64,000 nt of DNA, taken from Lytechinus pictus (Eukaryota). The notes under the pieces were generated by a model. The model had not been told where the DNA came from and did no database searches. It was given only the letters and a program-made list of their open reading frames with translations. Of this stretch, positions 24,092 through 47,673 are shown in pieces. The position numbers and the translations under genes are program-made. Each line of letters starts with the position of its first letter. Position 1 is the first letter of the stretch. Where the stretch lies: assembly GCF_037042905.1 (NCBI RefSeq), contig NC_087246.1, forward strand, positions 34,224,001 to 34,288,000, in the 5' to 3' direction.

Positions 24092-24163
24092 TAGCAGAGC
24101 GAGGTTTCGATCCTCGGACCTCTGGGTTATGGGCCCAGCACGCTTCCGCTGCGCCACTCTGCT
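24092..24163 (-). tRNA. tRNA-iMet (CAT), consensus
   Basis: AGCAGAGTGGCGCAGCGGAAGCGTGCTGGGCCCATAACCCAGAGGTCCGAGGATCGAAACCTCGCTCTGCTA; A1:U72, A54/A60, C33 and three G:C anticodon-stem pairs are eukaryotic initiator hallmarks. Confidence 0.95.
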
Positions 24164-24425
24164 TCACGGTAAGTCCCCTAGTATCTTCACATAATGAACC
24201 CAGTTTAATGATCATGAGAAAAATCTCTAAGAACGAATGAAATGACAGCAAGAAACAATTAAAAACATATATAGCAGAGCGAACCTTTAAAAGACTTCTC
24301 ATTAATGGGCTAGAGCAATTTTGCTTTTATAATGAAGAATATTTTGTATTAGAAAATCAAGCAAAAGAAATAGACTTCCTTTCATTTTAATCAAAAAATT
24401 AAACGAAAAAAAATCATAGGCCTTC

Positions 24426-24497
24426 TAGCAGAGCGAGGTTTCGATCCTCGGACCTCTGGGTTATGGGCCCAGCACGCTTCCGCTGCGCCACTCTGCT
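24426..24497 (-). tRNA. tRNA-iMet (CAT), consensus
   Basis: Identical to array consensus. Confidence 0.95.
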
Positions 24498-24715
24498 TCC
24501 CGATATATACTACTCTCTTTTCATAATGATTCAATTTTTATCAATTATGAAAACGATGTAAAGGAGTGAATGAAAGGGCAACAAGGAACAATTGAAAAAA
24601 ATACAGATTTAGCAGAGCGACTTTGCAAAATACTCCCCATACATGGACCAAAGCATCGCTAATTTGCTTCTATATATATGCATGATGAACAGTGCTTAGA
24701 AAATCACGCAAAAAT

Positions 24716-26899
24716 TCAGATATTCAGATATTCAGATATTCAAAATTTATTGTCATGCTCAAAAATAAAAATTACATTGGCACAAAAATCATATTCCGGC
24801 TGTTGGTATACAAAGAACAATATATAACATATAATAAATAAATTACAAAAATAATGGCATTAAATAATATACAAAGCAAAAATTACACAAAGACCTAATA
24901 CTAACCCAGAACAATATGATACCCTGCAAGGGCAGCTGCACTGAAAACTTTACCTGGTGCCGAGGGGGGAAATGCCTCGAGCACGGTGCCAGTCCAACAC
25001 ATCCATGGGCCCCGGTTCGACATTGAAACAATCACAACACATCACACTACAAAAACACAAAAAACCCATCCACACCACACCATGCCGATAAACACACCCC
25101 CAAAACTCCACACCAAAAACACACCACACACCACAGAAACATCTCACACCACAACACAACACACCATACCAACCCACACTACACACTACAAGTCATCGAT
25201 AACAATGATGTCGAAACGGCACCCATCCAGTGCTGGACACCACCACCACGCCCGGCGGTCCCCCCTCAGGACCAAGCAGCATTGCCTCAGCACAGCCGCC
25301 CCCGCAACGTATAAAAGTAATATAGCATGACAATTAAGTACAATACAAGAAATCAATTGGATTAAAATACATGTTGGAGTAAGTACTTGGCGGTATTTCG
25401 GTTTCAGTTTGAAGGGTATTGCCCACTAACAAAACAATATTGCACATGATATAAATTTAAGGGGGGGGGGGGGGGCTCATCGTTTAAACTCTGCATTGTA
25501 CAGAACCATTGCATTTGTGAGGAAAGAACATCTAAACCTACTAGTCCTTATTCTTGGTAACCGGATCCGCCCAGACCTATTAAAAACTACAAAGTCATGG
25601 AGGGGATGGGTATCGTCTCTGATGATACTATGTAGCTTATCCAAGACTGCTTTGTAAGCTATGTCTTCCAACTGGGGTATTGGCAAACCTATCACTTTAC
25701 TGGCATTTTTTATTGCCTTGCTCAGCCTATCCTTATTCTGGGAAGTTAGACCAAAAAACCAGATAGCACAGGAAAAAGAAATGATAGGTTTGATCAAACT
25801 TTCAAAACAGAACAGAAGAGTCTCTCTTTTGACGCTGAAAGATTTCAACTTCCTCAGAAAGTATACTCTCTGGTTCGCCTTTGAGACAATTTTTTGAGTG
25901 TTAACATTCCAGTTCAGATCATTATCTATGTGGGTGCCAAGATATTTGTATTCTGACACTATCTCAATTTCATCTTGATCAATGACAATTGGGCAAGGGT
26001 CATAATTCTTTTTCCGAAAATCCACTATCATTTCTTTTGTTTTCTTAGTGTTTAACAACAATGACATCTGTTTGCAACTTGCAACAAAATCAGCTACCTT
26101 ATTCCTGTACTCAACTTCATTATTGTCTTTAACTAGTCCAATTATACATGTGTCATCTGCATATTTAACTACCTTACAGTGTTCTGTATTAGACTGATTA
26201 TCTGAATCGCTTGTGAAAAGAGTATACAACATTGGCGACAATACACAACCTTGCGGAGTGCCTGTGTTGAGAATTTTTTCTTCAGAGAGCACATCCCCCA
26301 TTCTTACTCTTTGGGGCCTATTTGTCATGAAATCTCCTATCCATAGTAAAAGCCGTGGGTTGACATTCATGTCATACAGCTTTCTAATCAACATGTGAGG
26401 TACAATAGTGTTGAAAGCCGACGTGAAATCTGCAAACAAAATTCTAACATATGTAAGTGGTTTGTCAAGATGACCTAATACAGTGTGAGTCAAAAAAGCA
26501 CATGCATCTTCAACACCCCTGTTATCTTGATATGCAAACTGAAGTGGGTCCACAATGTTCTTTGTTTCTTCCTTTAAAATATCTCTAACAACCTTTTCAA
26601 AACATTTCATAATCACAGGTGTTAAAGCTATAGGTCTGAAATCATTTAACTGCCTTGGTTTGGCAACTTTGGGTACAGGGGATATAATGGCAGATTTCCA
26701 CAACAATGGAATTGTGTGCGAGTCTAATGACCATTGGAATAATCGACTAAAAATGCCACACAACTGTTGACTACATGATTTTAACATTCTTCCGCCTAAC
26801 CCATCTGGGCCTGTTGCTTTACTACTCTTTATTGACTTAAGCACCTTCCTAACAACCTCTTCAGTAATAACATTCCTGTCTTGCTCTGTTACATGACCT
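24716..26899 (-). mobile_element. 5'-truncated non-LTR retrotransposon, Rex1/Babar-like
   Basis: RT ORF; 3' end AATAAA followed by (TGAATATC)n tail; AAAAT TSD at 24711-24715 and 26900-26904; empty site visible in paralogous spacers (e.g. ~29502-29520). Confidence 0.9.
24919..25312 (-). other. Long imperfect RNA hairpin in the LINE 3' UTR (two ~105-nt arms, ~185-nt GU-rich loop)
   Basis: 24919-25023 is inverted-homologous to 25208-25312; most differences give G-U pairs only on the sense (minus) strand. Confidence 0.8.
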
Positions 26900-26919
26900 A
26901 AAATAGACTTTACTTCCAT
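25477..26919 (-). CDS. LINE reverse transcriptase (endonuclease missing; first ~7 codons come from the host spacer)
   Basis: 480-aa open frame with KATGPDG, LNDFRPIALT, DPLQFAY, ADFTSAFNTI, GTPQGCVLSP, KYADD and YKYLG motifs. Confidence 0.85.
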   Translation of the reverse strand: MEVKSILGHVTEQDRNVITEEVVRKVLKSIKSSKATGPDGLGGRMLKSCSQQLCGIFSRLFQWSLDSHTIPLLWKSAIISPVPKVAKPRQLNDFRPIALTPVIMKCFEKVVRDILKEETKNIVDPLQFAYQDNRGVEDACAFLTHTVLGHLDKPLTYVRILFADFTSAFNTIVPHMLIRKLYDMNVNPRLLLWIGDFMTNRPQRVRMGDVLSEEKILNTGTPQGCVLSPMLYTLFTSDSDNQSNTEHCKVVKYADDTCIIGLVKDNNEVEYRNKVADFVASCKQMSLLLNTKKTKEMIVDFRKKNYDPCPIVIDQDEIEIVSEYKYLGTHIDNDLNWNVNTQKIVSKANQRVYFLRKLKSFSVKRETLLFCFESLIKPIISFSCAIWFFGLTSQNKDRLSKAIKNASKVIGLPIPQLEDIAYKAVLDKLHSIIRDDTHPLHDFVVFNRSGRIRLPRIRTSRFRCSFLTNAMVLYNAEFKR

Positions 26920-27173
26920 TTTAATCGAAAATTATTATGAAGACACATTGCGATTACAGTATCAATAATGAAAAGGAACTCTAAGAATGAATGGAATGAC
27001 AAGAAACAATCAAAAAATAATAATTTAGCAAAACTATTTTGTATTCATGGGCCCAAGCACCCTAGAGCCATTTTGCTTTTATATTGAACAATAACTTGTA
27101 CTAGAAAATCATGCACAAGAAATAGACATCCTTCCAGTTTAGTTGAATATATTAAAAACGAGAAAAAATGTAT

Positions 27174-27215
27174 TAGCAAAGGTTTTGGTACTCTGACGTC
27201 TGGGTTTACTCTGCT
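27174..27215 (-). pseudogene. Internally deleted tRNA-iMet pseudogene
   Basis: Keeps both acceptor ends and a degenerate T arm; lacks D arm and anticodon. Confidence 0.7.
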
Positions 27216-27449
27216 TTACCAATTTTTTTGTCCTCCCAATTTGATTTAAACCATATTATCTATATGAGGGGAATAACATTAAAATAACAAGTAATTCTAT
27301 GAACAAAGTGAGCAGAGCGAAGTTTCAAAGGACTTTTCATGTATTTGCCGAGTTCATGTCCTATGCGTATAACTTTGCTTCTTTAACAACCGGAATTTTG
27401 ATGAAAAATGTTATACGTCGATGATAAAAACAAAAGAAAGAAAATATAT

Positions 27450-27521
27450 TAGCAGAGCGAGGTTTCGATCCTCGGACCTCTGGGTTATGGGCCCAGCACG
27501 CTTCCGCTGCGCCACTCTGCT
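27450..27521 (-). tRNA. tRNA-iMet (CAT), consensus
   Basis: Identical to consensus. Confidence 0.95.
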
Positions 27522-27765
27522 TCACGATAAATGCCAGGTTCTTTCATCATGATTCCAATTATGAGGATAATCTGTACAAATGAATGACAAACAAGAGACA
27601 ACTTCAAAACAAATTTAGCAGAGCGATACTTCAAGACTTTTTATAGCCAAGCGCAGCAATATTTTTCTTCTATGTATATAATGAACACTGCTAACAAAAT
27701 CATGCAAATAAAAAGACTTTTCTTCCTTTTTTAATCGTAAATATGAACGAAACCAAAAATGGTAT

Positions 27766-27837
27766 TAGCAGAGCGAGGTTTCGATCCTCGGACCTCTGGG
27801 TTATGGGCCCAGCACGCTTCCGCTGCGCCACTCTGCT
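27766..27837 (-). tRNA. tRNA-iMet (CAT), consensus
   Basis: Identical to consensus. Confidence 0.95.
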
Positions 27838-28104
27838 TCATGGTAAGTACCCGAGTATCTTTTCATGAACCAATTTTAATGATCATGAGAATAATCTCTA
27901 AGAACGAATAAAATTACCCTGAGAAACAAATAAAAACAAATTTAGCAGAGCGAATATTTAAAAGACTTCTCATTCATGGGCCAATGCAGAGCCATTTTGG
28001 TTTTATAATGAAGATTATTTTGTATTCGAAAATTATGCAAAACAAATACATTTTCTATCATTTAAATCAAAAATATTAAACGAAAAAAAAAACAACAATC
28101 AGAA

Positions 28105-28176
28105 TAGCAGAGCGAGGTTTCGATCCTCGGACCTCTGGGTTATGGGCCCAGCACGCTTCCGCTGCGCCACTCTGCT
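28105..28176 (-). tRNA. tRNA-iMet (CAT), consensus
   Basis: Identical to consensus. Confidence 0.95.
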
Positions 28177-28653
28177 TCGCGGTAACTGGAGTATCTTTTC
28201 ATAATGATTAAATTTTAGCAATCATGAAAACAACGTAAAGGAGCTAATGAAAGGGCAACAAGGAACAATTAATAAACAAATTTAGCAGAGCGACTTTGCA
28301 AAATACTCCTCGTACATGGACCAATGCATCGCTAGTTTGCTTCTATATACGCATATTGATCAGTGCTTAGAAAATCATGCAAAGATAGACTTTACTTCCA
28401 TTTTAATTGAAAATTATTATGAAGACACATTGCTATTACAGTATTAATAATGAGAAGGAACTCTAAGAATGAATGGAATGACAAGAAACAATTAAAAATA
28501 ATAATAATGCAAAACTATTTTTTATTCATGGGCCCAAGCACCCTAAAGCCATTTTGCCTTTATATTGAACAATAACTTGTACTAGAAAATCATGCACAAG
28601 AAATATACATCCTTCCAGTTTAGTTGAAAATATTATAACGATAAAAAATGTAT

Positions 28654-28695
28654 TAGCAAAGGTTTTGAAACTCTGACGTCTGGGTTTACTCTGCT
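28654..28695 (-). pseudogene. Internally deleted tRNA-iMet pseudogene
   Basis: Same deletion as 27174. Confidence 0.7.
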
Positions 28696-28933
28696 TTACC
28701 AATTTTTTTTTGTCCTCCCAATTTGATATAAACCATATTATCTATATGAGGGGAATAAAATTAAAATAACAAGTAATTTTATAAACAAAGTGAGCAGAGC
28801 GAAGTTTCAAAGGACTTTTCATTAATTGGCCAAGTATACATGTCCTATGCGTAACTTTGCTTCTTTAACAACCGGAATTTTGATGAAAAATGTTAAACGT
28901 CGATTCGATAAACCCAAAGGAAAGAAAATATAT

Positions 28934-29005
28934 TAGCATAGCGAGGTTTCGATCCTCGGACCTCTGGGTTATGGGCCCAGCACGCTTCCGCTGCGCCACT
29001 CTGCT
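28934..29005 (-). tRNA. tRNA-iMet (CAT), C68A variant
   Basis: One acceptor-stem mismatch. Confidence 0.88.
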
Positions 29006-29222
29006 TCATTGGAATTACTGGGATATCTCCACACAAATCAATGTAATTGAGAAGGAATGAGATGAAAATAAATAGTTACAAAAAAGTACATTTAGCAGAT
29101 TAGATTTCTCATTCATGGCTCAATATTTTTTTGCGTAACTTTTTTCTAATAAGTCAAAAGAAATATGACTATTTCTTTTCAATTAAATATATCAAACGAT
29201 CGGTTAAGAAAACAAAATATGT

Positions 29223-29294
29223 TAGCAGAGCGAGGTTTCGATCCTCGGACCTCTGGGTTATGGGCACAGCACGCTTCCGCTGCGCCACTCTGCT
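29223..29294 (-). tRNA. tRNA-iMet (CAT), G30U variant
   Basis: One anticodon-stem mismatch. Confidence 0.85.
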
Positions 29295-29782
29295 TCCCGA
29301 TAAATACTACTCTCTTTCCATAATGATTCCATTTTAACAATTATGAAAACGATGTAAAGGAGTGAATGAAAGGGCAACAAGGAACAATTGAAAAAAATAC
29401 AAATTTAGCAGAGCGACTTTGAAAAAATACTCCCCATACATGGACCAAAGCATCGCTAATTTGCTTCTATATATATGCATGATGAACAGTGCTTAGAAAA
29501 TCACGCAAAAATAGACTTTACTTCCATTTTAATCGAAAATTATTATGAAGACACATTGCGATTACAGTATCAATAATGAGAAGGAACTCTAAGAATGAAT
29601 GGAATGACAAGAAACAATCAAAAAATAATAATTTAGCAAAACTATTTTGTATTCATGGGCCCAAGCACCCTAAAGCCATTTTGCCTTTATATTGAACAAT
29701 AACTTGTACTAGAAAATCATGCACAAGAAATAGACATCCTTCCAGTTTAGTTGAATATATTAAAAACGAGAAAAAAATGTAT

Positions 29783-29824
29783 TAGCAAAGGTTTTGGTAC
29801 TCTGACGTCTGGGTTTACTCTGCT
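29783..29824 (-). pseudogene. Internally deleted tRNA-iMet pseudogene
   Basis: Same deletion as 27174. Confidence 0.7.
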
Positions 29825-30058
29825 TTACCAATTTTTTTGTCCCCCCCCCCCAATTTAATTTAAACCATATTATCTATAAGAGGGGAATACAATTAAAATA
29901 ACAACTAATTTCATGAACAAAGTGAGCAGAGCGAAGTTTCAAAGGACTTTTCATGTATTTGCCGAGTTCATGTCCTATGCGTTTTGCTTCTTTAACAACC
30001 GGAATTTTGATGAAAAATGTTATACGTCGATGATAAAAACAAAACAAAGAAAATATAT

Positions 30059-30130
30059 TAGCAGAGCGAGGTTTCGATCCTCGGACCGCTGGGTTATGGG
30101 CCCAGCACGTTTCCGCTGCGCCACTCTGCT
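30059..30130 (-). tRNA. tRNA-iMet (CAT), G22A+A44C variant
   Basis: Two substitutions. Confidence 0.85.
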
Positions 30131-30365
30131 TCATTGGAATTACTAGGATATCTCCACACAATTTAATGTAAATGAGAAGGAATGAGATGAAAATAAATAA
30201 ATAGTTACAAAAAAAAGTACATTTAGCAGATTAGATTTCTCATTCATGGCTGAATATAACTTAGTCGTTTTTGCCTAACTTATTTTTTAATAAGTCAAAA
30301 GAAATATAATGTTATTCATTTTCAATTGAATATATCAAACGATCGGTAAAGAGGAAAAGATATGT

Positions 30366-30437
30366 TAGCAGAGCGAGGTTTCGATCCTCGGACCTCTGGG
30401 TTATGGGCCCAGCACGCTTCCGCTGCGCCACTCTGCT
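30366..30437 (-). tRNA. tRNA-iMet (CAT), consensus
   Basis: Identical to consensus. Confidence 0.95.
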
Positions 30438-30675
30438 TTTTTGGAATTACTAGGATATCTCCACATAATTCAATGGAAATGATAATTATATACGAAGGAA
30501 TTAAATGAAAATAAATAGTTACGAACATACATTTAGCAGATTAGATTTCTCATTCATGGCTGAATATAACTTAGTCGTTTTTGCCTAACTTATTTTCTAT
30601 TAAGTCAAAAGAAATAAAATGTTATTCATTTTCAGTTGAATATATCAAACGATCGGTAAAGAGGAAAAAATATGT

Positions 30676-30747
30676 TAGCAGAGCGAGGTTTCGATCCTCG
30701 GACCTCTGGGTTATGGGCCCAGCACGCTTCCGCTGCGCCACTCTGCT
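30676..30747 (-). tRNA. tRNA-iMet (CAT), consensus
   Basis: Identical to consensus. Confidence 0.95.
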
Positions 30748-30991
30748 TCACGATAAATGCTATGTACTTTTCATCATGATTTTAATTATTAGAATAATCT
30801 GTACAAATGAATGACAACAAATTACAACTTCAAAACAAATTAAGCAGAGCGATACTTTAAGCCTTTATGTAGCCCAGCGCAGCGATATTTTGCTTCTGTG
30901 TATATAATGAACAGTGCTTAAAAAATCATGCAAATAAATAAACTTTTCTTCCTTTTTTAATCGAAAATATGAACGAAATAAAACATGGTAT

Positions 30992-31063
30992 TAGCAGAGC
31001 GAGGTTTCGATCCTCGGACCTCTGGGTTATGGGCCCAGCACGCTTCCGCTGCGCCACTCTGCT
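30992..31063 (-). tRNA. tRNA-iMet (CAT), consensus
   Basis: Identical to consensus. Confidence 0.95.
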
Positions 31064-31311
31064 TTTTTGGAATTACTGGGATATCTCCACATAATTCAAT
31101 GGAAATGATAATTCCCGGCGGTGATAATTATATACGAAGGAACGAAATAAAAATAAATAGTTACGAAAACATACATTTAGCTGATTAGATTTCTCATTCA
31201 TGGCTGAATATAACTTAGTCATTTTTGCGTAACTTTTTTCTATTTCTATAAGTCAAAAGAAATATAATACTATTCATTTTCAATTAAATATCGGTACAGA
31301 GGAAAAAACGT

Positions 31312-31383
31312 TAGCAGAGCGAGGTTTCGATCCTCGGACCTCTGGGTTATGGGCCCAGCACGCTTCCGCTGCGCCACTCTGCT
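31312..31383 (-). tRNA. tRNA-iMet (CAT), consensus
   Basis: Identical to consensus. Confidence 0.95.
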
Positions 31384-31626
31384 TCACGATAAATGCCAGG
31401 TTCTTTCATCATGATTCCAATTATGAGGATAATCTGTACAAATGAATGACATCAAGAAACAACTTCAAAACAAATTTAGCAGAGCGATACTTCAAGACTT
31501 TTTATAGCCAAGCGCAGCAATATTTTTCTTCTATGTATATAATGAACACTGCTAACAAAATCATGCAAATAAAAAGACTTTTCTTCCTTTTTTAATCGTA
31601 AATATGAACGAAACCAAAAATGGTAT

Positions 31627-31698
31627 TAGCAGAGCGAGGTTTCGATCCTCGGACCTCTGGGTTATGGGCCCAGCACGCTTCCGCTGCGCCACTCTGCT
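31627..31698 (-). tRNA. tRNA-iMet (CAT), consensus
   Basis: Identical to consensus. Confidence 0.95.
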
Positions 31699-31965
31699 TC
31701 ATGGTAAGTACCCGAGTATCTTTTCATGAACCAATTTTAATGATCATGAGAATAATCTCTAAGAACGAATAAAATTACCCTGAGAAACAAATAAAAACAA
31801 ATTTAGCAGAGCGAATATTTAAAAGACTTCTCATTCATGGGCCAATGCAGAGCCATTTTGGTTTTATAATGAAGATTATTTTGTATTCGAAAATTATGCA
31901 AAACAAATACATTTTCTATCATTTAAATCAAAAATATTAAACGAAAAAAAAAACAACAATCAGAA

Positions 31966-32037
31966 TAGCAGAGCGAGGTTTCGATCCTCGGACCTCTGGG
32001 TTATGGGCCCAGCACGCTTCCGCTGCGCCACTCTGCT
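31966..32037 (-). tRNA. tRNA-iMet (CAT), consensus
   Basis: Identical to consensus. Confidence 0.95.
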
Positions 32038-32514
32038 TCGCGGTAACTGGAGTATCTTTTCATAATGATTAAATTTTAGCAATCATGAAAACAACGTAAA
32101 GGAGCTAATGAAAGGGCAACAAGGAACAATTAATAAACAAATTTAGCAGAGCGACTTTGCAAAATACTCCTCGTACATGGACCAATGCATCGCTAGTTTG
32201 CTTCTATATATGCATGATGAACAGTGCTTAGAAAATCATGCAAAGATAGACTTTACTTCCATTTTAATTGAAAATTATTATGAAGACACATTGCTATTAC
32301 AGTATTAATAATGAGAAGGAACTCTAAGAATGAATGGAATGACAAGAAACAATTAAAAATAATAATAATGCAAAACTATTTTTTATTCATGGGCCCAAGC
32401 ACCCTAAAGCCATTTTGCCTTTATATTGAACAATAACTTGTACTAGAAAATCATGCACAAGAAATATACATCCTTCCAGTTTAGTTGAAAATATTATAAC
32501 GATAAAAAATGTAT

Positions 32515-32556
32515 TAGCAAAGGTTTTGAAACTCTGACGTCTGGGTTTACTCTGCT
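32515..32556 (-). pseudogene. Internally deleted tRNA-iMet pseudogene
   Basis: Same deletion as 27174. Confidence 0.7.
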
Positions 32557-32794
32557 TTACCAATTTTTTTTTGTCCTCCCAATTTGATATAAACCATATT
32601 ATCTATATGAGGGGAATAAAATTAAAATAACAAGTAATTTTATAAACAAAGTGAGCAGAGCGAAGTTTCAAAGGACTTTTCATTAATTGGCCAAGTATAC
32701 ATGTCCTATGCGTAACTTTGCTTCTTTAACAACCGGAATTTTGATGAAAAGTGTTAAACGTCGATTCGATAAACCCAAAGGAAAGAAAATATAT

Positions 32795-32866
32795 TAGCAT
32801 AGCGAGGTTTCGATCCTCGGACCTCTGGGTTATGGGCCCAGCACGCTTCCGCTGCGCCACTCTGCT
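32795..32866 (-). tRNA. tRNA-iMet (CAT), C68A variant
   Basis: HOR paralogue of 28934. Confidence 0.88.
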
Positions 32867-33083
32867 TCATTGGAATTACTGGGATATCTCCACACAAATC
32901 AATGTAATTGAGAAGGAATGAGATGAAAATAAATAGTTACAAAAAAGTACATTTAGCAGATTAGATTTCTCATTCATGGCTCAATATTTTTTTGCGTAAC
33001 TTTTTTCTAATAAGTCAAAAGAAATATGACTATTTCTTTTCAATTAAATATATCAAACGATCGGTTAAGAAAACAAAATATGT

Positions 33084-33155
33084 TAGCAGAGCGAGGTTTC
33101 GATCCTCGGACCTCTGGGTTATGGGCACAGCACGCTTCCGCTGCGCCACTCTGCT
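33084..33155 (-). tRNA. tRNA-iMet (CAT), G30U variant
   Basis: HOR paralogue of 29223. Confidence 0.85.
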
Positions 33156-33643
33156 TCCCGATAAATACTACTCTCTTTCCATAATGATTCCATTTTAACA
33201 ATTATGAAAACGATGTAAAGGAGTGAATGAAAGGGCAACAAGGAACAATTGAAAAAAATACAAATTTAGCAGAGCGACTTTGAAAAAATACTCCCCATAC
33301 ATGGACCAAAGCATCGCTAATTTGCTTCTATATATATGCATGATGAACAGTGCTTAGAAAATCACGCAAAAATAGACTTTACTTCCATTTTAATCGAAAA
33401 TTATTATGAAGACACATTGCGATTACAGTATCAATAATGAGAAGGAACTCTAAGAATGAATGGAATGACAAGAAACAATCAAAAAATAATAATTTAGCAA
33501 AACTATTTTGTATTCATGGGCCCAAGCACCCTAAAGCCATTTTGCCTTTATATTGAACAATAACTTGTACTAGAAAATCATGCACAAGAAATAGACATCC
33601 TTCCAGTTTAGTTGAATATATTAAAAACGAGAAAAAAATGTAT

Positions 33644-33685
33644 TAGCAAAGGTTTTGGTACTCTGACGTCTGGGTTTACTCTGCT
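33644..33685 (-). pseudogene. Internally deleted tRNA-iMet pseudogene
   Basis: Same deletion as 27174. Confidence 0.7.
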
Positions 33686-33918
33686 TTACCAATTTTTTTG
33701 TCCCCCCCCCCAATTTAATTTAAACCATATTATCTATAAGAGGGGAATACAATTAAAATAACAACTAATTTCATGAACAAAGTGAGCAGAGCGAAGTTTC
33801 AAAGGACTTTTCATGTATTTGCCGAGTTCATGTCCTATGCGTTTTGCTTCTTTAACAACCGGAATTTTGATGAAAAATGTTATACGTCGATGATAAAAAC
33901 AAAACAAAGAAAATATAT

Positions 33919-33990
33919 TAGCAGAGCGAGGTTTCGATCCTCGGACCGCTGGGTTATGGGCCCAGCACGTTTCCGCTGCGCCACTCTGCT
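33919..33990 (-). tRNA. tRNA-iMet (CAT), G22A+A44C variant
   Basis: HOR paralogue of 30059. Confidence 0.85.
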
Positions 33991-34225
33991 TCATTGGAAT
34001 TACTAGGATATCTCCACACAATTTAATGTAAATGAGAAGGAATGAGATGAAAATAAATAAATAGTTACAAAAAAAAGTACATTTAGCAGATTAGATTTCT
34101 CATTCATGGCTGAATATAACTTAGTCGTTTTTGCCTAACTTATTTTTTAATAAGTCAAAAGAAATATAATGTTATTCATTTTCAATTGAATATATCAAAC
34201 GATCGGTAAAGAGGAAAAGATATGT

Positions 34226-34297
34226 TAGCAGAGCGAGGTTTCGATCCTCGGACCTCTGGGTTATGGGCCCAGCACGCTTCCGCTGCGCCACTCTGCT
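34226..34297 (-). tRNA. tRNA-iMet (CAT), consensus
   Basis: Identical to consensus. Confidence 0.95.
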
Positions 34298-34535
34298 TTT
34301 TTGGAATTACTAGGATATCTCCACATAATTCAATGGAAATGATAATTATATACGAAGGAATTAAATGAAAATAAATAGTTACGAACATACATTTAGCAGA
34401 TTAGATTTCTCATTCATGGCTGAATATAACTTAGTCGTTTTTGCCTAACTTATTTTCTATTAAGTCAAAAGAAATAAAATGTTATTCATTTTCAGTTGAA
34501 TATATCAAACGATCGGTAAAGAGGAAAAAATATGT

Positions 34536-34607
34536 TAGCAGAGCGAGGTTTCGATCCTCGGACCTCTGGGTTATGGGCCCAGCACGCTTCCGCTGCGCCA
34601 CTCTGCT
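34536..34607 (-). tRNA. tRNA-iMet (CAT), consensus
   Basis: Identical to consensus. Confidence 0.95.
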
Positions 34608-34851
34608 TCACGATAAATGCTATGTACTTTTCATCATGATTTTAATTATTAGAATAATCTGTACAAATGAATGACAACAAATTACAACTTCAAAACAAAT
34701 TAAGCAGAGCGATACTTTAAGCCTTTATGTAGCCCAGCGCAGCGATATTTTGCTTCTGTGTATATAATGAACAGTGCTTAAAAAATCATGCAAATAAATA
34801 AACTTTTCTTCCTTTTTTAATCGAAAATATGAACGAAATAAAACATGGTAT

Positions 34852-34923
34852 TAGCAGAGCGAGGTTTCGATCCTCGGACCTCTGGGTTATGGGCCCAGCA
34901 CGCTTCCGCTGCGCCACTCTGCT
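34852..34923 (-). tRNA. tRNA-iMet (CAT), consensus
   Basis: Identical to consensus. Confidence 0.95.
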
Positions 34924-35171
34924 TTTTTGGAATTACTGGGATATCTCCACATAATTCAATGGAAATGATAATTCCCGGCGGTGATAATTATATACGAAGG
35001 AACGAAATAAAAATAAATAGTTACGAAAACATACATTTAGCTGATTAGATTTCTCATTCATGGCTGAATATAACTTAGTCATTTTTGCGTAACTTTTTTC
35101 TATTTCTATAAGTCAAAAGAAATATAATACTATTCATTTTCAATTAAATATCGGTACAGAGGAAAAAACGT

Positions 35172-35243
35172 TAGCAGAGCGAGGTTTCGATCCTCGGACC
35201 TCTGGGTTATGGGCCCAGCACGCTTCCGCTGCGCCACTCTGCT
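35172..35243 (-). tRNA. tRNA-iMet (CAT), consensus
   Basis: Identical to consensus. Confidence 0.95.
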
Positions 35244-35486
35244 TCACGATAAATGCCAGGTTCTTTCATCATGATTCCAATTATGAGGATAATCTGTACA
35301 AATGAATGACATAAAGAAACAACTTCAAAACAAATTTAGCAGAGCGATACTTCAAGACTTTTTATAGCCAAGCGCAGCAATATTTTTCTTCTATGTATAT
35401 AATGAACACTGCTAACAAAATCATGCAAATAAAAAGAATTTTCTTTATTTTCTAATCGAAAATATGAACGAAACCAAAAATGGTAT

Positions 35487-37039: not shown

Positions 37040-37277
37040 TTATTGGAATTATTTGGATATCTTCACATAATTCAATGTAAATGATAATTATATACGAAGG
37101 AATGAAATGAAAATAAATAGTTACGAACATACATTTAGCAGATTAGATTTCTCATTCATGGCTGAATATAACTTAGTCGTTTTTGCCTAACTTAGTTTCT
37201 AATAAGTCAAAAGAAATATAATGTTGTTCATTTTCAATTGAATATATCAAACGATCGGTAAAGAGGAAAAAATATGT

Positions 37278-37349
37278 TAGCAGAGCGAGGTTTCGATCCT
37301 CGGACCTCTGGGTTATGGGCCCAGCACGCTTCCGCTGCGCCACTCTGCT
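37278..37349 (-). tRNA. tRNA-iMet (CAT), consensus
   Basis: Identical to consensus. Confidence 0.95.
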
Positions 37350-37593
37350 TCACGATAAATGCCAGGTTCTTTCATCATGATTCCAATTATGAGGATAATC
37401 TGTACAAATGAATGACAAACAAGAAACAACTTCAAAACAAATTTAGCAGAGCGATACTTCAAGACTTTTTATAGCCAAGCGCAGCAATATTTTTCTTCTA
37501 TGTATATAATGAACACTGCTAACAAAATCATGCAAATAAAAAGACTTTTCTTTCTTTTTTAATCGAAAATATGAACGAAACCAAAAATGGTAT

Positions 37594-37665
37594 TAGCAGA
37601 GCGAGGTTTCGATCCTCGGACCTCTGGGTTATGGGCCCAGCACGCTTCCGCTGCGCCACTCTGCT
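37594..37665 (-). tRNA. tRNA-iMet (CAT), consensus
   Basis: Identical to consensus. Confidence 0.95.
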
Positions 37666-37913
37666 TCATGGTAAGTACCCGAGTATCTTTTCATGAACCA
37701 ATTTTAATGATCATGAGAATAATCTCTAAGAACGAATAAAATTACCCTGAGAAACAAATAAAAACAAATTTAGCAGAGCGAATATTTAAAAGACTTCTCA
37801 TTCATGGGCCAATGCAGAGCCATTTATTTTGTATTCGAAAATTATGCAAAACAAATACATTTTCTATCATTTAAATCAAAAATATTAAACGAAAAAAACA
37901 ACAACAATCAAAA

Positions 37914-37985
37914 TAGCAGAGCGAGGTTTCGATCCTCGGACCTCTGGGTTATGGGCCCAGCACGCTTCCGCTGCGCCACTCTGCT
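37914..37985 (-). tRNA. tRNA-iMet (CAT), consensus
   Basis: Identical to consensus. Confidence 0.95.
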
Positions 37986-38462
37986 TCGCGGTAACTGGAG
38001 TATCTTTTCATAATGATTAAATTTTAGCAATCATGAAAACAACGTAAAGGAGCTAATGAAAGGGCAACAAGGAACAATTAATAAACAAATTTAGCAGAGC
38101 GACTTTGCAAAATACTCCTCGTACATGGACCAATGCATCGCTAGTTTGCTTCTATATACGCATATTGATCAGTGCTGAGAAAATCATGGAAAGATAGACT
38201 TTACTTCCATTTTAATTGAAAATTATTATGAAGACACATTACTATTACAGTATTAATAATGAGAAGGAACTCTAAGAATGAATGGAATGACAAGAAACAA
38301 TTAAAAATAATAATAATGCAAAACTATTTTTTATTCATGGGCCCAAGCACCCTAAAGCCATTTTGCCTTTATATTGAACAATAACTTGTACTAGAAAATC
38401 ATGCACAAGAAATATACATCCTTCCAGTTTAGTTGAAAATATTATAACGATAAAAAATGTAT

Positions 38463-38504
38463 TAGCAAAGGTTTTGATACTCTGACGTCTGGGTTTACTC
38501 TGCT
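38463..38504 (-). pseudogene. Internally deleted tRNA-iMet pseudogene
   Basis: Same deletion as 27174. Confidence 0.7.
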
Positions 38505-38741
38505 TTACCAATTTTTTTTGTCCTCCCAATTTGATTTAAACCATATTATCTATATGAGGGGAATAACATTAAAATAACAACTAATTTTATAAACAAAGTG
38601 AGCAGAGCGAAGTTTCAAAGGACTTTTCATTAATTGGCCAAGTATACATGTCCTATGCGTAACTTTGCTTCTTTAACAACCGGAATTTTGATGAAAAATG
38701 TTAAACGTCGATTCGATAAACCCAAAGGAAAGAAAATATAT

Positions 38742-38813
38742 TAGCATAGCGAGGTTTCGATCCTCGGACCTCTGGGTTATGGGCCCAGCACGCTTCCGCT
38801 GCGCCACTCTGCT
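38742..38813 (-). tRNA. tRNA-iMet (CAT), C68A variant
   Basis: Third copy of this variant. Confidence 0.88.
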
Positions 38814-39028
38814 TCATTGGAATTACTGGGATATCTCCACACAAATCAATGTAAATGAGAAGGAATGAGATGAAAATAAATAGTTACAAAAAAGTACATT
38901 TAGCAGATTAGATTTCTCATTCATGGCTCAATATTTTTTTGCGTAACTTTTTTCTAATAAGTCAAAAGAAATATGACTATTTCTTTTCAATTAAATATAT
39001 TAAACGATCGGTTAAGAAAACAATATGT

Positions 39029-39100
39029 TAGCAGAGCGAGGTTTCGATCCTCGGACCTCTGGGTTATGGGCACAGCACGCTTCCGCTGCGCCACTTTGCT
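39029..39100 (-). tRNA. tRNA-iMet (CAT), G30U+G5A variant
   Basis: Anticodon- and acceptor-stem mismatches. Confidence 0.75.
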
Positions 39101-39586
39101 TCCCGATAAATACTACTCTCTTTCCATAATGATTCCATTTTAACAATTATGAAAACGATGTAAAGGAGTGAATGAAAGGGCAACAAGGAACAATTGAAAA
39201 AAATACAAATTTAGCAGAGCGACTTTGAAAAAATACTCCCCATACATGGACCAAAGCATCGCTAATTTGCTTCTATATATATGCATGATGAACAGTGCTT
39301 AGAAAATCACGCAAAAATAGACTTTACTTCCATTCTAATCGAAAATTATTATGAAGACACATTGCGATTACAGTATCAATAATGAGAAGGAACTCTAAGA
39401 ATGAATGGAATGACAAGAAACAATCAAAAAATAATAATTTAGCAAAACTATTTTGTATTCATGGGCCCAAGCACCCTAGAGCCATTTTGCTTTTATATTG
39501 AACAATAACTTGTACTAGAAAATCATGCACAAGAAATAGACATCCTTCCAGTTTAGTTGAAAATATTATAACGATAAAAAATGTAT

Positions 39587-39628
39587 TAGCAAAGGTTTTG
39601 ATACTCTGACGTCTGGGTTTACTCTGAT
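39587..39628 (-). pseudogene. Internally deleted tRNA-iMet pseudogene
   Basis: Same deletion as 27174. Confidence 0.7.
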
Positions 39629-39863
39629 TTACCAATTTTAGTTGTCCTCCCAATTTGATTTAAACCATATTATCTATATGAGGGGAATAAAATTAAAATA
39701 ACAAGTAATTTTATAAACAAAGTGAGCAGAGCGAAGTTTCAAAGGACTTTTCATGTATTTGCCGAGTTCATGTCCTATGCGTATAACTTTGCTTCTTTAA
39801 CAACCGGAATTTTGATGAAAAATGTTATACGTCGATGATAAAAACAAAAGAAAGAAAATATAT

Positions 39864-39935
39864 TAGCAGAGCGAGGTTTCGATCCTCGGACCTCTGGGTT
39901 ATGGGCCCAGCACGCTTCCGCTGCGCCACTCTGCT
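39864..39935 (-). tRNA. tRNA-iMet (CAT), consensus
   Basis: Identical to consensus. Confidence 0.95.
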
Positions 39936-40009
39936 TTATTGGAATTACTGGGATATCTCCACACAATTCAATGTAAATGAGAAGGAATGAGATGAAAATA
40001 AATAAAAAA

Positions 40010-40029
40010 TTCTGCTGCGCCACTCTGCT
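40010..40029 (-). pseudogene. 5' 20-nt remnant of tRNA-iMet left by a deletion
   Basis: TTCTGCTGCGCCACTCTGCT followed by a normal upstream spacer. Confidence 0.75.
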
Positions 40030-42373: not shown

Positions 42374-42445
42374 AAGCAGAGCAATGTTTCGATCCTCGGA
42401 CCTCTGGATTATGGGCGCAGCACTCTTCCGCTGCCCCACAATGCT
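42374..42445 (-). pseudogene. tRNA-iMet pseudogene
   Basis: ~9 substitutions breaking all four stems. Confidence 0.8.
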
Positions 42446-42599
42446 TAACGATAAATACCAGTCTCTTTTTTATAATGATTTCAATTATAAGAATATCTGT
42501 AAAAACGATGGACAACAAGAAACAATTAAAAACAAATTTAGCAGAGTGATACTTCAAGACTTTTTATTCAGTTGCTAGCGCAGAAATATTTTGCTTCTA

Positions 42600-42763
42600 C
42601 ACTGTAAAAAATGAAGTGCTAATTCAGCACTTAAAGTGCTTGTATAGTGACTGCTCTACGAGTGCTGATTTTCTAGTTTAAATTTGAACTAAAAAATCAG
42701 CGCTCGAAGTGCAGTCACTATGCAAGCACTGTAAGTGCTAAATTAGCACTTCATTTTTTTACA

Positions 42764-42766
<3 letters not shown>
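42600..42766. mobile_element. Palindromic CACTGTAAAA-TIR MITE followed by (TA)n
   Basis: Near-complete inverted repeat; absent from paralogous spacers; (TA)n at ~42769-42826. Confidence 0.85.
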
Positions 42767-42829
<63 letters not shown>

Positions 42830-42886
42830 TGCAAATAGACTTTTCTTCCTTTTTTTAATCGAACATATTAACAAAAAAAGGTGTAT

Positions 42887-42958
42887 TAGCAGAGGGAGGT
42901 TTCGATCCTCGGACATGTGGGTTATGGGCCCTGCACCCTTCCGCTTGGCCACTCTGCT
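42887..42958 (-). pseudogene. tRNA-iMet pseudogene
   Basis: ~7 substitutions (G65C, G45U, G43C, U28A, C23G, C13A, G12C). Confidence 0.75.
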
Positions 42959-43403
42959 TTAGTGGAATGACTGGGATATCTTCACATAATTCAATGTAAA
43001 TGATAATAATATAAGAAAGAATGAAATGAAAATAAATAGTTACGAAAACATACATTTAGCAGATTAGATTTCTCATTCATCGCTGAATATAAAACTTAGT
43101 CATTTTTGCGTAGATTTTTTTTCTTCCAATATGTCAAAAGAAATACACTACTCAAAAAAAGTTAAGGACCACTTTTTAAAACGTACATAAAGATTTTATA
43201 CAAGGTGTTTTATTTCTGGAAATACCTCAGTACAACTGTCCTAAATGTCCTTAAACACGCTGTAATCAATTTCACGCATGGGTGGTTTCAGTTGTTGCAC
43301 AATGTCTCTCGCATCACTGCACATCCTGAAAAGTGGGCCCCGAGGGGTATCAGCTACCGACATGAAGTGGTAAAAACGAATGTCTGAGTGTCTTTCAGGC
43401 AGT

Positions 43404-44425
43404 TCAGTAACGAGTGTGACCACCTCCTGCAGCAATAACGGCTTCACAGCGCTGTCTCATGGAGCTGATGAGGCGATTGATGTCTCTGACGTCCAGTGCA
43501 TCCCATGCAGCCTCCAGAGCCACACCCAGCTGCTGCAGTCCAAGTGGATGGGCTTCGAGCTGCTCGAGACTCCTCCCCATCATGTCCCAGACGTGCTCTA
43601 TCGGGTTTAAGTCCGGGGACCTCGCTGGCCACTCCATACGCTCAATCCCCTGGCCCTCAAGGAACTCGGTCACCACCCAAGCTCGGTGGGCACGGGCATT
43701 GTCATCCATGAAAATGATGTTTTGTCCCACATTTTCTGCAAATGGCACCACTATAGGTTCAAGGACCTCATCCCTGTACCTCACTCCTGTCATTGCTCCC
43801 CCTGGGACCACGTAGAGACGAGTACGGTTGGCGTAGGTGATGCCTCCCCACACCATGACGCTGCCCCCCCCCATAACGGTCATGTTCTGCAATACAGGGG
43901 TCTGCAAATCTCTCTCCTGGTCGCCTCCAGACTCTCGAACGTCCATCATTGTGGTCAAGGGAAAATCTGCTCTCATCTGTGAACAGAACTCTACGCCATT
44001 GCTGTCTGGTCCATCTGACATGCTCCCGGGCCCAGTTGAGACGAATTCTTCTGTGAGCAGGGGTGAGTGGGACACACTGAGCTGGCCGTCTGGCATGCAT
44101 ATTGGCTCTGTGAAGTCGGTTACGGATTGTTTGAGTGGAAACAATCACTCCAGTTGCTGCAGCGAAGTCATTGTTGAGGCGGCGTGCACTGTGAAAGCGG
44201 TTGCGGAGGCTGAGATTCGTCAAGTAGCGATCATCTCTAGGGGTTGTCGAAACTGGTCGGCCACTGCGGGGTCTCTCGGAGTATAGCCCTGTCTCTCGGT
44301 GTCTTTGATTTGCTCTGCTAATGACACTGTGCCATCATTCTGGCTACTCTTCGCTGACTGAGGCCAGCTTCCAGCATCCCTAGGGCTCTGGCTACATCTG
44401 TTTCACTTAGGTGGTGTCTTGGCAT
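43404..44425 (-). pseudogene. Tc1 transposase with two frameshifts
   Basis: MPRHHLS...RSGRP (HTH), VLFTDESRF, SVMVWG, MDDNA-34aa-NPIE; frameshifts near 44333 and in the G9 run at 43864-43872. Confidence 0.9.
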
Positions 44426-44815
44426 TGCTGTTGTAGGCAAGTTGTTGATTGTACAGACTAAAGACGGAAAATGCTTTGGAAGACACTTGTCTTATGGCCC
44501 ACTGCAATGATGCCAGAGACATCATGAAAGAACTGCATGTGTGAAATTGATGTCATTGTGTTTGATGGCATTCTGGACAGCTGTATCTTGGCATTGCTAT
44601 TGTCAGCAAGTTGTTGATTGTAGAGACTAAAGACAGAAAATGCTTTGGAAGCCACTTTTGTACGGGCACATTGCAATGATGCAAGAGACATGAAAGAACT
44701 GCATGTGTGAAATTGATTTCATTGTGTTTGATGGCATCCTGGACAGCTGTATCTTGGCATTGCTGTTGTCAGCAATTTGTTGATTGTAGAGACTAAAGAC
44801 AGAAAATGCATTTGA
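44418..44815. repeat. ~167-bp tandem repeat (2.4 copies) in the Tc1 5' region
   Basis: TCTTGGCATTGCT...AGACTAAAGAC...AAATGC recurs at 44418, 44587 and 44752. Confidence 0.85.
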
Positions 44816-45092
44816 ATCCACATTTGTACCACTTCACAATGGGCCCACTTTTCAGGATATGCAATAATGCGAGAGACATCATGCAACAACTGAAACCACC
44901 CATGTGTGAAATTGTTACAGGGTGTTTGAGGAGATTCAAGACAGCCATATTCGGGTATTTCTAGAAATACAACACCCGGTTTGAAAATTGTATACACACA
45001 TTAAAAAGTGGTCCTTAACTTTTTTTGAGTAGTGTATGTTATTCCTTTTCAATTGAATATTACAAAAGATCGGTTAAGAGGAAATAGTATGT

Positions 45093-46199: not shown

Positions 46200-46271
46200 T
46201 AGCAGAGCGAGGTTTCGATTCTCGGACCTCTTGGTCGTGGGCCCAGCACGCTTCCGCCGCGCCACTCTGCT
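46200..46271 (-). pseudogene. tRNA-iMet-derived copy with anticodon CAC (probable pseudogene)
   Basis: U36C, A37G, C41A, A14G, G53A. Confidence 0.7.
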
Positions 46272-46516: not shown

Positions 46517-46588
46517 TAGCAGAGCGAGGTTTCGATCCTCGGACCTCTGGGTTATGGGCCCAGCACGCTTCCGCTGCGCCACTCTGCT
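46517..46588 (-). tRNA. tRNA-iMet (CAT), consensus
   Basis: Identical to consensus. Confidence 0.95.
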
Positions 46589-46770
46589 TCATTGGAATTT
46601 CAATGAATCCTCCACATAATTCAATGTAAATGATAAAAGATTTCGCATTCAACGGTCAATATAACTTAGTCATTTTGCATAACTTCATTTTATTAAGTCA
46701 AAGGAAATATGATGTTATTTCTTTTTAATCAAAAATATTAAACCACCAGTAAAGAGGAAAAAATATATAT

Positions 46771-46842
46771 TAGCAGAGGGAGGTTTCGATCCTCGGACCT
46801 CTGGGTTATGGGCCCAGCACGCTTCCGCTGCGCCACTCTGCT
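46771..46842 (-). tRNA. tRNA-iMet (CAT), G65C variant
   Basis: One T-stem mismatch. Confidence 0.85.
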
Positions 46843-47080
46843 TCATGAGAAATACAAAGATATCTCCACATAATTCAATGTAAATGATAATTATATAAGA
46901 AGGAATGAAATGAAAATAAAGTTGCGAAAACATACATTTAGCAGAATAGATTTCGCATTCAACGGTCAATATAACTAAGTCATTTTGCGTAACTTTGTTT
47001 TTATTAAGTCAAAAGAAATATGGCGTTATATATTTTCAATTTAATATATTAAACGATCAGTAAAGATGAAAAAAATATGT

Positions 47081-47152
47081 TAGCAGAGCGAGGTTTCGAT
47101 CCTCGGACCTCTGGGTTATGGGCCCAGCACGCTTCCACTGCGCCACTCTGCT
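47081..47152 (-). tRNA. tRNA-iMet (CAT), C16U variant
   Basis: D-loop change. Confidence 0.92.
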
Positions 47153-47340
47153 TCACGATAAATACCATCTCTTTTCATAATGATTGCAATTATGAGAATA
47201 ATCTGTTAAAACAATGGACAACAAGAAACAATTCAAAAAAATTAGCAGAGTGATTCTTTAAGACTTTTTATTCATTATCTAGCGCAGAAATACTTCCTTT
47301 TTTAACTGAACATAATTTTATTAACGAAAAAAGGGTGTAT

Positions 47341-47412
47341 TAGCAGAGCGAGGTTTCGATCCTCGGCCCTCTGGGTTATGGGCCCAGCACGCTTCCGCTG
47401 CGCCACTCTGCT
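47341..47412 (-). tRNA. tRNA-iMet (CAT), U47G variant
   Basis: Variable-loop change. Confidence 0.9.
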
Positions 47413-47601
47413 TCACGATAAATACCAGTCTCTTTTCATAATGATTGCAATTATGAGAATAATCTGTAAAAACAATGGACAACAAGAAACAATTAAAAAA
47501 AATTAGCAGAGTGATACTTTAAGACTTTTTATTCATTATCTAGCGCAGAAATACTTCCTTTTTTAACTGAACATAAGTTTATTAACGAAAAAAAAGTGTA
47601 T

Positions 47602-47673
47602 TAGCAGAGCGAGGTTTCGATCCTCGGACCTCTGGGTTATGGGCCCAGCACGCTTCCGCTGCACCACTCTGCT
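47602..47673 (-). tRNA. tRNA-iMet (CAT), C11U variant
   Basis: U11-G24 wobble retained. Confidence 0.9.

What the first reader, a model, noticed from the sequence alone, without database searches (positions are those of the whole stretch)
24092..47673. Pure initiator-tRNA-Met mega-array: 48 co-oriented copies in 23.6 kb
Seen: a single tRNA species, 27 copies identical while spacers have diverged into about five types. That contrast implies selection or gene-restricted conversion. Established: tRNA-iMet supplies the eIF2 ternary complex, and tDNA clusters can act as TFIIIC barriers. Inference: a high-output locus (for example for oocyte or embryo stockpiling) and/or a chromatin boundary, probably copy-number variable.
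Basis: partly seen in the sequence, partly recalled or inferred. Interest (0 to 1): 0.7.

Follow-up and report, generated by a model that had tools for sequence, protein, structure and literature searches.

The report
Tandem array of initiator tRNA genes
A 23.6-kb stretch of this animal genome really does hold 48 head-to-tail copies of the initiator methionine tRNA gene, about two thirds of all such genes in the genome. It is an ordinary kind of locally amplified tRNA gene cluster, kept intact by selection on the gene, and the same genome holds an even larger lysine tRNA array.

Summary
There are 48 minus-strand initiator tRNA-Met copies at 24092-47673, 27 of them identical, no other tRNA species in the window, and five main spacer types plus singletons.

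The array grew by local tandem duplication. A 3,862-bp block of nine genes is repeated at 99.6% identity, with older blocks at 97%, 96% and 91%. The spacers occur nowhere else in the 812-Mb genome, so this is not a mobile element. Two young transposons interrupt the array.

After discounting recent duplicates, 19 of 34 independent unit lineages still carry the perfect gene. Flanks differ by about 37% and genes by 1.5-2.6%, and conservation stops within 10 nt of the gene. This points to purifying selection. Damaging variants inherited through block duplications were not erased, so rapid gene-restricted conversion is unlikely. Sixteen copies have broken stems, and the spacers hold dead tRNA relics, which fits birth-and-death turnover.

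46 of 48 copies have a T-run terminator. Genome-wide there are about 71 such genes: 48 here, 22 on C10 and 1 on C20. A 76-copy tRNA-Lys array on C4 shows the layout is a habit of this genome.

Verdict: a new member of a known kind, of modest interest.

The parts
24092..47673 (-). Whole array: 48 co-oriented initiator tRNA-Met genes. Typical units are 254-341 bp, and some spacers of about 830 bp hold dead tRNA relics.
24092..24163 (-). Reference copy of the 72-nt gene, one of the 27 identical copies. It has anticodon CAU, an A1:U72 pair, three G:C pairs in the anticodon stem and a T loop with A54 and A60.
   Evidence: (57.1 bits)
27440..31301 (-). Higher-order repeat, copy A: a 3,862-bp block with nine genes (copies 3-11).
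   Evidence: 27440-31699 against 31302-35559 is 99.58% identical over 4,260 bp
31302..35163 (-). Higher-order repeat, copy B (copies 12-20). It differs from A by 16 substitutions, none of them in a tRNA.
37260..40006 (-). Older partial copy of the block (copies 26-31), 97.3% identical to block A.
24716..26899 (-). Inserted 5'-truncated non-LTR retrotransposon. Its reverse transcriptase ORF lies at 25477-26919.
   Evidence: RVT_1, E 2.5e-30; 98-99% identical copies on other contigs
43153..45035 (-). Inserted Tc1/mariner DNA transposon with terminal inverted repeats of about 195 bp.
   Evidence: DDE_3, HTH_Tnp_Tc3_2; dozens of 99% identical copies
42375..42958 (-). Two decayed gene copies next to the mariner insertion: 42375-42445 with 9 differences and 42887-42958 with 7.
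46200..46271 (-). Decayed copy with 5 differences, including changes to the anticodon.
46771..47673 (-). Edge of the array: four copies (45-48), each with its own single substitution.
24272..24282 (-). Example of the relic of a tRNA 3' end followed by a T-run. Such a relic sits about 100-120 nt upstream of the live gene in most units.
40014..40029 (-). Isolated 16-nt fragment of the tRNA 5' end, a scar of a rearrangement.

Best explanation
This is a locally amplified battery of RNA polymerase III genes for the cytoplasmic initiator tRNA-Met. Each unit of about 310 bp is a self-contained type-2 transcription unit, with internal A and B boxes and a T-run terminator a few bases after the gene.

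The array grew and keeps turning over by unequal crossing-over or replication slippage between units. This duplicates single units and multi-unit blocks; the youngest event is a 3.86-kb block of nine genes. Purifying selection on the tRNA sequence keeps most gene bodies perfect while the spacers drift freely. Selection per copy is weak, so damaged copies persist for a while, get duplicated along with their neighbours, and finally decay into the relics seen in the spacers. This is a birth-and-death process.

Shown here: the anatomy, the duplication layers, the restriction of conservation to the gene, the locus-specific spacers, and the share of the genome's initiator genes held here (48 of about 71; 27 of 43 perfect copies). 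Inferred, not shown: that the copies are transcribed and that the array is a main source of initiator tRNA.
For: Identity as initiator tRNA: CAU anticodon, cloverleaf score of 57 bits, A1:U72, GGG/CCC in the anticodon stem and a T loop with A54/A60.

Pol III signals: 46 of 48 copies have T4 or longer within 30 nt downstream, at a median distance of 7 nt, against 36% at random positions.

Local duplication: blocks at 99.6%, 97.3%, 95.8% and 91% identity. The spacers match only this array in the whole genome.

Constraint on the gene:
- Mean pairwise difference is 0.374 in the flanks and 0.026 in the gene.
- On the flank tree there are 4.69 parsimony steps per site in the flanks and 0.56 in the gene.
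- The first 10 nt on either side differ by 0.38, against 0.015 inside the gene.
- 19 of 34 lineages defined at under 5% flank distance hold a perfect gene, and the median flank distance among perfect copies is 0.39.
- In the recent block comparisons the gene shows 11/1512 differences and the spacers 151/7040 (p = 4e-5).

The same gene sequence is kept at C10 (15 perfect copies) and C20 (1 copy), among unrelated spacers.

Death side of the process: 16 copies have broken stem pairs, the spacers hold relics, and two young transposons have inserted.
Against: A third of the copies carry stem-breaking changes, so the working copy number is at most about 32. Short conversion tracts limited by homology to the 72-bp gene would also give sharp boundaries, so conversion cannot be excluded as a contributor. 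The pooled recent-rate test reuses block A in all three comparisons, so its p-value is optimistic. The flank alignments are gappy, so the absolute flank distances are rough. Copy number rests on one assembly.
Confidence: 0.8

Rival explanations
1. Concerted evolution by gene conversion confined to the 72-bp gene, rather than selection, keeps the copies identical.
For: Conversion needs homology, so between units with diverged spacers the tracts would naturally end at the gene borders. This matches the sharp borders seen. G29T occurs in copy 25, whose flanks belong to a different spacer family from copies 7, 16 and 30. That could reflect a conversion or a recurrent mutation.
Against: Damaging variants were inherited through block duplications and remain unrepaired at 0.4-3% spacer divergence. 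Each of the four edge copies keeps a private change. Relics of dead copies lying about 110 nt from live genes were not rescued. The sequence is identical on three different contigs with unrelated spacers.
Confidence: 0.15
2. The copy number is inflated by assembly error, for example the 99.6% identical blocks A and B being one block, or two haplotypes joined in tandem.
For: Blocks A and B differ by only 16 substitutions and 2 gap columns in 4,260 bp. Arrays of this kind are hard to assemble, and no reads could be laid.
Against: The join is in phase with the unit pattern, and the blocks carry fixed differences. Even if one block were removed, 39 copies would remain. Older blocks at 97%, 96% and 91% show that the same process has acted repeatedly. 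There are no N runs inside the array.
Confidence: 0.08
3. The array is mostly a silent, satellite-like graveyard. The working initiator genes are those on C10 and C20.
For: 16 of 48 copies have broken stems. Two transposons have inserted and been tolerated. There is no expression evidence.
Against: Silent copies would drift like their spacers. Instead 19 independent lineages keep the perfect gene while their flanks differ by about 39%, and terminators are retained in 46 of 48 copies.
Confidence: 0.07
4. The main role of the array is architectural: a TFIIIC-bound chromatin boundary rather than a source of tRNA.
For: tDNA repeats have been proposed as boundary elements, for example the human 1q23.3 tRNA repeat (PMC4041453, abstract). 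48 B boxes lie within 24 kb.
Against: A boundary needs only the B box, yet the whole 72-nt gene is conserved, including the acceptor and anticodon stems. No Pfam-recognisable coding sequence was found in the window flanks that might need separating. Nothing here tests binding.
Confidence: 0.1
5. The units are copies of a tRNA-carrying mobile element, as other tRNA arrays in this genome were judged to be in earlier notes of this scan.
For: Earlier notes describe tandem, tRNA-bearing retroelement arrays in the same genome.
Against: A short spacer and a long spacer both match only this array in 812 Mb, and do not match even the C10 initiator cluster. No unit-like DNA lies outside 24092-47673.
Confidence: 0.02

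Closest known systems
Homogeneous tandem tDNA clusters of eukaryotes, as defined by Bermudez-Santana et al. 2010 (PMC2888827)
   Same: Adjacent tDNAs lie less than 1 kb apart, belong to the same isoacceptor family and run in parallel. That survey found such clusters to be common in several lineages.
   Different: This is a long example for a single species of tRNA. It is the initiator, and it holds about two thirds of that gene family. Sea urchins are not mentioned in that paper.
Human 1q23.3 tRNA variable-number tandem repeat (PMC4041453)
   Same: A tandemly repeated unit carrying tRNA genes, unstable in copy number and proposed as a boundary element.
   Different: According to that paper's abstract, the human unit is 7.3 kb, GC-rich and binds CTCF. 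Here the units are about 310 bp and AT-rich, with one gene each. Copy-number variation is only inferred here.
Entamoeba tRNA gene arrays (PMC2652664)
   Same: tRNA genes are organised as long tandem arrays with fast-evolving spacers.
   Different: [quoted passage not shown]
Xenopus laevis 3.18-kb tDNA repeat and oocyte-type 5S genes; sea urchin early histone gene repeats (from my own knowledge, not checked here)
   Same: Tandem amplification of small, highly demanded genes in animals with large eggs. As I recall, the Xenopus tDNA repeat includes initiator tRNA genes.
   Different: Those repeats are heterotypic or have known stage-specific expression. No expression data exist here.
tRNA-Lys array of the same genome, C4:9700711-9737965
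   Same: It has the same build: 76 co-oriented copies, units of about 470 bp and a 3.97-kb higher-order repeat at 98.7% identity.
   Different: It mixes two anticodons (61 UUU, 15 CUU) and has 31 distinct gene sequences, so it is less uniform than the initiator array.

Membership tests
Eukaryotic cytoplasmic initiator tRNA-Met gene | tRNA cloverleaf with a CAU anticodon | tested here: met
   ARAGORN. Rfam RF00005 scores 57.1 bits against a gathering score of 29. All 21 stem pairs are canonical.
Eukaryotic cytoplasmic initiator tRNA-Met gene | A1:U72 pair at the end of the acceptor stem | tested here: met
   The first pair is A-T in the reference copy.
Eukaryotic cytoplasmic initiator tRNA-Met gene | Three consecutive G:C pairs at the bottom of the anticodon stem | tested here: met
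   GGG at linear positions 28-30 pairs with CCC at 38-40.
Eukaryotic cytoplasmic initiator tRNA-Met gene | T loop with A54 and A60 in place of T54 and a pyrimidine at 60 | tested here: met
   The T loop reads ATCGAAA. That these positions define initiators is from my own knowledge.
Eukaryotic cytoplasmic initiator tRNA-Met gene | Charged with Met and used by eIF2 for initiation | not testable with these tools
   This needs biochemistry.
Type-2 RNA polymerase III transcription unit | Internal A box and B box | tested here: met
   Read from the sequence: TGGCGCAGCGG at positions 8-18 and GGATCGAAACC at 51-61. The consensus is from my own knowledge.
Type-2 RNA polymerase III transcription unit | Run of four or more T shortly after the gene | tested here: met
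   46 of 48 copies have one, at a median of 7 nt downstream, against a background of 36%.
Type-2 RNA polymerase III transcription unit | Pol III/TFIIIC occupancy and pre-tRNA transcripts | not testable with these tools
Homogeneous tandem tDNA cluster (PMC2888827) | Neighbouring tDNAs under 1000 nt apart, same isoacceptor family, parallel orientation | tested here: met
   45 of 47 intervals are under 1 kb. The two exceptions, 3024 and 2206 bp, are transposon insertions. All copies are Met-CAU on the minus strand.
tRNA-derived SINE or mobile tandem retroelement | Copies of the unit dispersed through the genome | tested here: not met
   The spacers match only this array.
Array homogenised by gene conversion (concerted evolution) | Variants erased or spread independently of the flank genealogy | tested here: inconclusive
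   Shared damaging variants follow the block genealogy and persist, which argues against fast conversion. One variant, G29T in copy 25, is discordant.
tDNA chromatin barrier or insulator | TFIIIC binding and measurable barrier activity | not testable with these tools
   No chromatin data are available.

The most novel reading that the evidence does not exclude
The initiator array here and the tRNA-Lys array on C4 may be a dedicated, stage-specific (oocyte or early-embryo) set of tRNA genes, regulated separately from the irregular C10 cluster. That would parallel oocyte-type 5S genes in frogs and early histone repeats in sea urchins. The unit-specific leaders would make such a switch directly measurable.
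Probability: 0.15. Interest if true: 0.55.

Novelty: new member of a known kind. Interest (0 to 1): 0.3.

Why it matters
The array gives a clean natural example of how a multi-copy tRNA family is maintained. Nested duplication layers, inherited damaged copies and dead relics let selection be separated from conversion within a single locus. About 70 of the roughly 71 initiator genes sit in two clusters whose spacers differ, so leader and trailer sequencing could tell which cluster feeds which tissue or stage. Beyond that, it is an annotation fact, not a new mechanism.

Tried and rejected
Mobile-element origin: rejected, because the spacers are unique to the locus.

A conserved upstream control element: the tRNA-3'-end-like block about 110 nt upstream looked striking. 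However, its parsimony steps (1-5 per column) are no lower than those of its 5'-flank surroundings, and it is absent from the C10 and C20 flanks. I read it as a relic of a dead gene.

A shared motif at about -30 between the C2, C10 and C20 flanks: only the GA dinucleotide just before the gene is common to all three, so I make no claim.

A gradient of extra mutation next to the genes, as a possible signature of germline transcription: no clear gradient was seen.

Flanking genes: 17 open reading frames from the window were scanned in two Pfam calls. Only the transposon proteins gave a significant Pfam match.

Species: earlier notes of this scan call the genome a painted sea urchin. I could not verify this independently.

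Literature: I found no paper on sea urchin tRNA arrays in the library.
Full report
**Observation.** ARAGORN reports 45 tRNA genes in the window, all on the minus strand between 24092 and 47673. 44 are Met-CAU, and one is called Tyr only because a damaged anticodon stem shifts the fold. Rfam finds 46 tRNA matches above its gathering score and no other RNA family. A blastn scan with one copy finds 48 near-full-length copies. This count includes three decayed ones at 42375, 42887 and 46200 with 9, 7 and 5 differences. Exactly 27 copies are identical. No other tRNA species lies in the 64-kb window.

**Initiator identity.** The 72-nt gene has all 21 stem pairs canonical. It has an A1:U72 pair, GGG/CCC in the anticodon stem and a T loop reading ATCGAAA, which gives A54 and A60. 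By my knowledge of the family, these are the marks of a eukaryotic cytoplasmic initiator and not an elongator tRNA-Met. The internal A and B boxes are readable in the sequence. 46 of 48 copies have a run of four or more T starting within 30 nt after the gene, at a median of 7 nt. Only 36% of random positions in the array show this.

**Architecture.** Unit spacing is mostly 254-341 bp, with some spacers of about 830 bp.
- The array is built of nested duplications. 27440-31699 matches 31302-35559 at 99.58% over 4,260 bp with a shift of 3,862 bp, which is a block of nine genes. Older copies of the block are 97.3%, 95.8% and about 91% identical.
- Clustering the flanks at under 20% distance gives five large spacer families plus ten singletons. 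Writing the five families as B to F, the youngest block reads E-C-B-D-B-D-D-E-F, twice.
- Most units carry a short relic of a tRNA 3' end followed by a T-run, about 100-120 nt upstream of the live gene. The long spacers hold two or three such relics, and a 16-nt 5' fragment lies at 40014-40029.
- Two stretches are foreign. 24716-26899 is a 5'-truncated non-LTR retrotransposon with an RVT_1 domain. 43153-45035 is a Tc1/mariner element with DDE_3 and HTH_Tnp_Tc3_2 domains. Both have many 98-99% identical copies elsewhere in the genome, so they inserted recently into an existing array.
- No unit-like DNA lies outside the array.

**Origin.** A short spacer and a long spacer, searched against the whole 812-Mb assembly, match only this array. 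The units are therefore not a dispersed mobile element. Earlier notes of this scan had judged other tRNA arrays in this genome to be mobile elements. This array grew in place.

**Selection or conversion.**
- The mean pairwise difference is 0.374 in 250 nt of flank and 0.026 in the gene.
- On a tree built from the flanks, the flanks need 4.69 parsimony steps per site and the gene 0.56. About half of the gene's 40 steps fall in the three decayed copies.
- Among the other 45 copies, the first 10 nt on either side of the gene already differ by 0.38, against 0.015 inside it. Conservation is therefore confined to the gene.
- Grouping units whose flanks differ by under 5% removes the recent duplicates. 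This leaves 34 lineages, 19 of which carry the perfect gene. The median flank distance among the 27 perfect copies is 0.39.
- In the young blocks alone, the genes show 11 differences in 1,512 sites and the spacers 151 in 7,040, a ratio of about 0.34 (p = 4e-5). The three comparisons share block A, so this p-value is optimistic.
- The same gene sequence is kept in 15 copies on C10 and one on C20. The C2 spacers have no match there.
- Variants that break stem pairs sit at corresponding positions of the duplicated blocks. These are C67A in copies 6, 15 and 29, G29T in copies 7, 16 and 30, and G21A+A43C in copies 8 and 17. They were copied with their blocks and have not been repaired since.

Together this favours purifying selection on the tRNA sequence, with weak selection per copy. 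It argues against fast gene-restricted conversion. Short tracts limited by homology cannot be excluded as a minor contributor.

**State of the copies.** 27 copies are perfect. Five change only a loop position, a variable-region position or a wobble pair. 16 have at least one broken stem pair. The four copies at the high-coordinate edge each carry a private change, and the most decayed copies flank the mariner insertion. The picture is birth by unequal exchange and death by mutation.

**Genome context.** The window is C2:34224001-34288000 of an assembly of 811.7 Mb in 368 contigs.
- A 29-nt pattern from the T arm and acceptor end, allowing up to 2 mismatches, occurs 70 times and its reversed control 0 times. 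47 hits are in this array, 22 are on C10:7141768-7157222 and one is on C20. Adding the most decayed copy here gives 48 in the array.
- The array thus holds about 48 of 71 initiator genes and 27 of 43 perfect ones.
- The C10 cluster is irregular, with spacing of 325-1383 bp, and is split into six minus-strand and fifteen plus-strand full-length copies facing away from each other.
- A family search with RF00005 led to C4:9700711-9737965. That stretch holds 76 co-oriented tRNA-Lys genes with a 3.97-kb higher-order repeat at 98.7% identity.
- Large single-species tandem arrays are therefore a habit of this genome, not something peculiar to the initiator tRNA.

**What could not be tested.** Transcription, stage specificity, Pol III/TFIIIC occupancy, barrier activity and copy-number variation all remain untested. 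The N runs at 55020-55288 and 58718-58889 lie outside the array and were left alone. The species name (painted sea urchin) comes only from earlier unchecked notes.

**Comparison with the known.** Homogeneous, parallel tDNA clusters are a described feature of many eukaryotic genomes (PMC2888827). tRNA-bearing tandem repeats are known in humans (PMC4041453) and Entamoeba (PMC2652664). This locus meets the definition of a homogeneous tDNA cluster. It is a long example that carries the initiator and holds most of that gene family. I found no paper describing it or any sea urchin tRNA array in the library searched.

**Verdict.** This is a real and well-built feature. The 'conversion' half is not supported as the main force. 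The functional ideas (stockpiling, boundary) are untested and are made less specific by the Lys array. It is a new member of a known kind, of modest interest.

Noticed in passing
G000:C10:7141768-7157222 (L003, L002, L004): A second initiator tRNA-Met cluster with 21 full copies plus one half copy, 15 of them perfect. Spacing is irregular, with six full-length copies on the minus strand followed by fifteen on the plus strand, facing away from each other. Its spacers are unrelated to those of the C2 array.
   Followed up: partly
L004:2151-2222 (C10:7157151-7157222): The last copy of the C10 cluster is an otherwise perfect initiator tRNA body whose anticodon is CAC instead of CAT, so ARAGORN calls it Val. 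It is probably a decaying edge copy. If expressed, it would be an initiator-shaped tRNA that reads GUG.
   Followed up: partly
G000:C4:9700711-9737965 (L006-L009): 76 co-oriented tRNA-Lys genes (61 UUU, 15 CUU; 31 distinct sequences) in 37 kb. Units are about 470 bp, with a 3,974-bp higher-order repeat at 98.7% identity.
   Followed up: partly
L005:2736-2807 (C20:12053736-12053807): A lone, perfect initiator tRNA-Met gene with its own T-run terminator. It is the only copy found outside the two clusters.
   Followed up: partly
window 43153-45035: A Tc1/mariner element with terminal inverted repeats of about 195 bp. It has dozens of 99% identical full-length and internally deleted copies across the genome, so the family looks recently active.
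   Followed up: partly
window 25477-26919 (-): The reverse-transcriptase ORF of the inserted non-LTR element also matches Pfam ALKBH8_N (PF09004, E 8.7e-08) just after the RVT_1 domain. Other copies in the genome share the 3' end and are truncated at the 5' end.
   Followed up: no
window 24272-24282, and the same position in most units: A relic of a tRNA 3' end plus T-run lies about 100-120 nt upstream of each live gene. This suggests that the present unit of about 310 bp descends from a pair of shorter units, one of which died.
   Followed up: partly
window 55020-55288 and 58718-58889: Two N runs of 269 and 172 bases lie in the flank beyond the high-coordinate end of the array, outside the array. 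They were left untouched.
   Followed up: no
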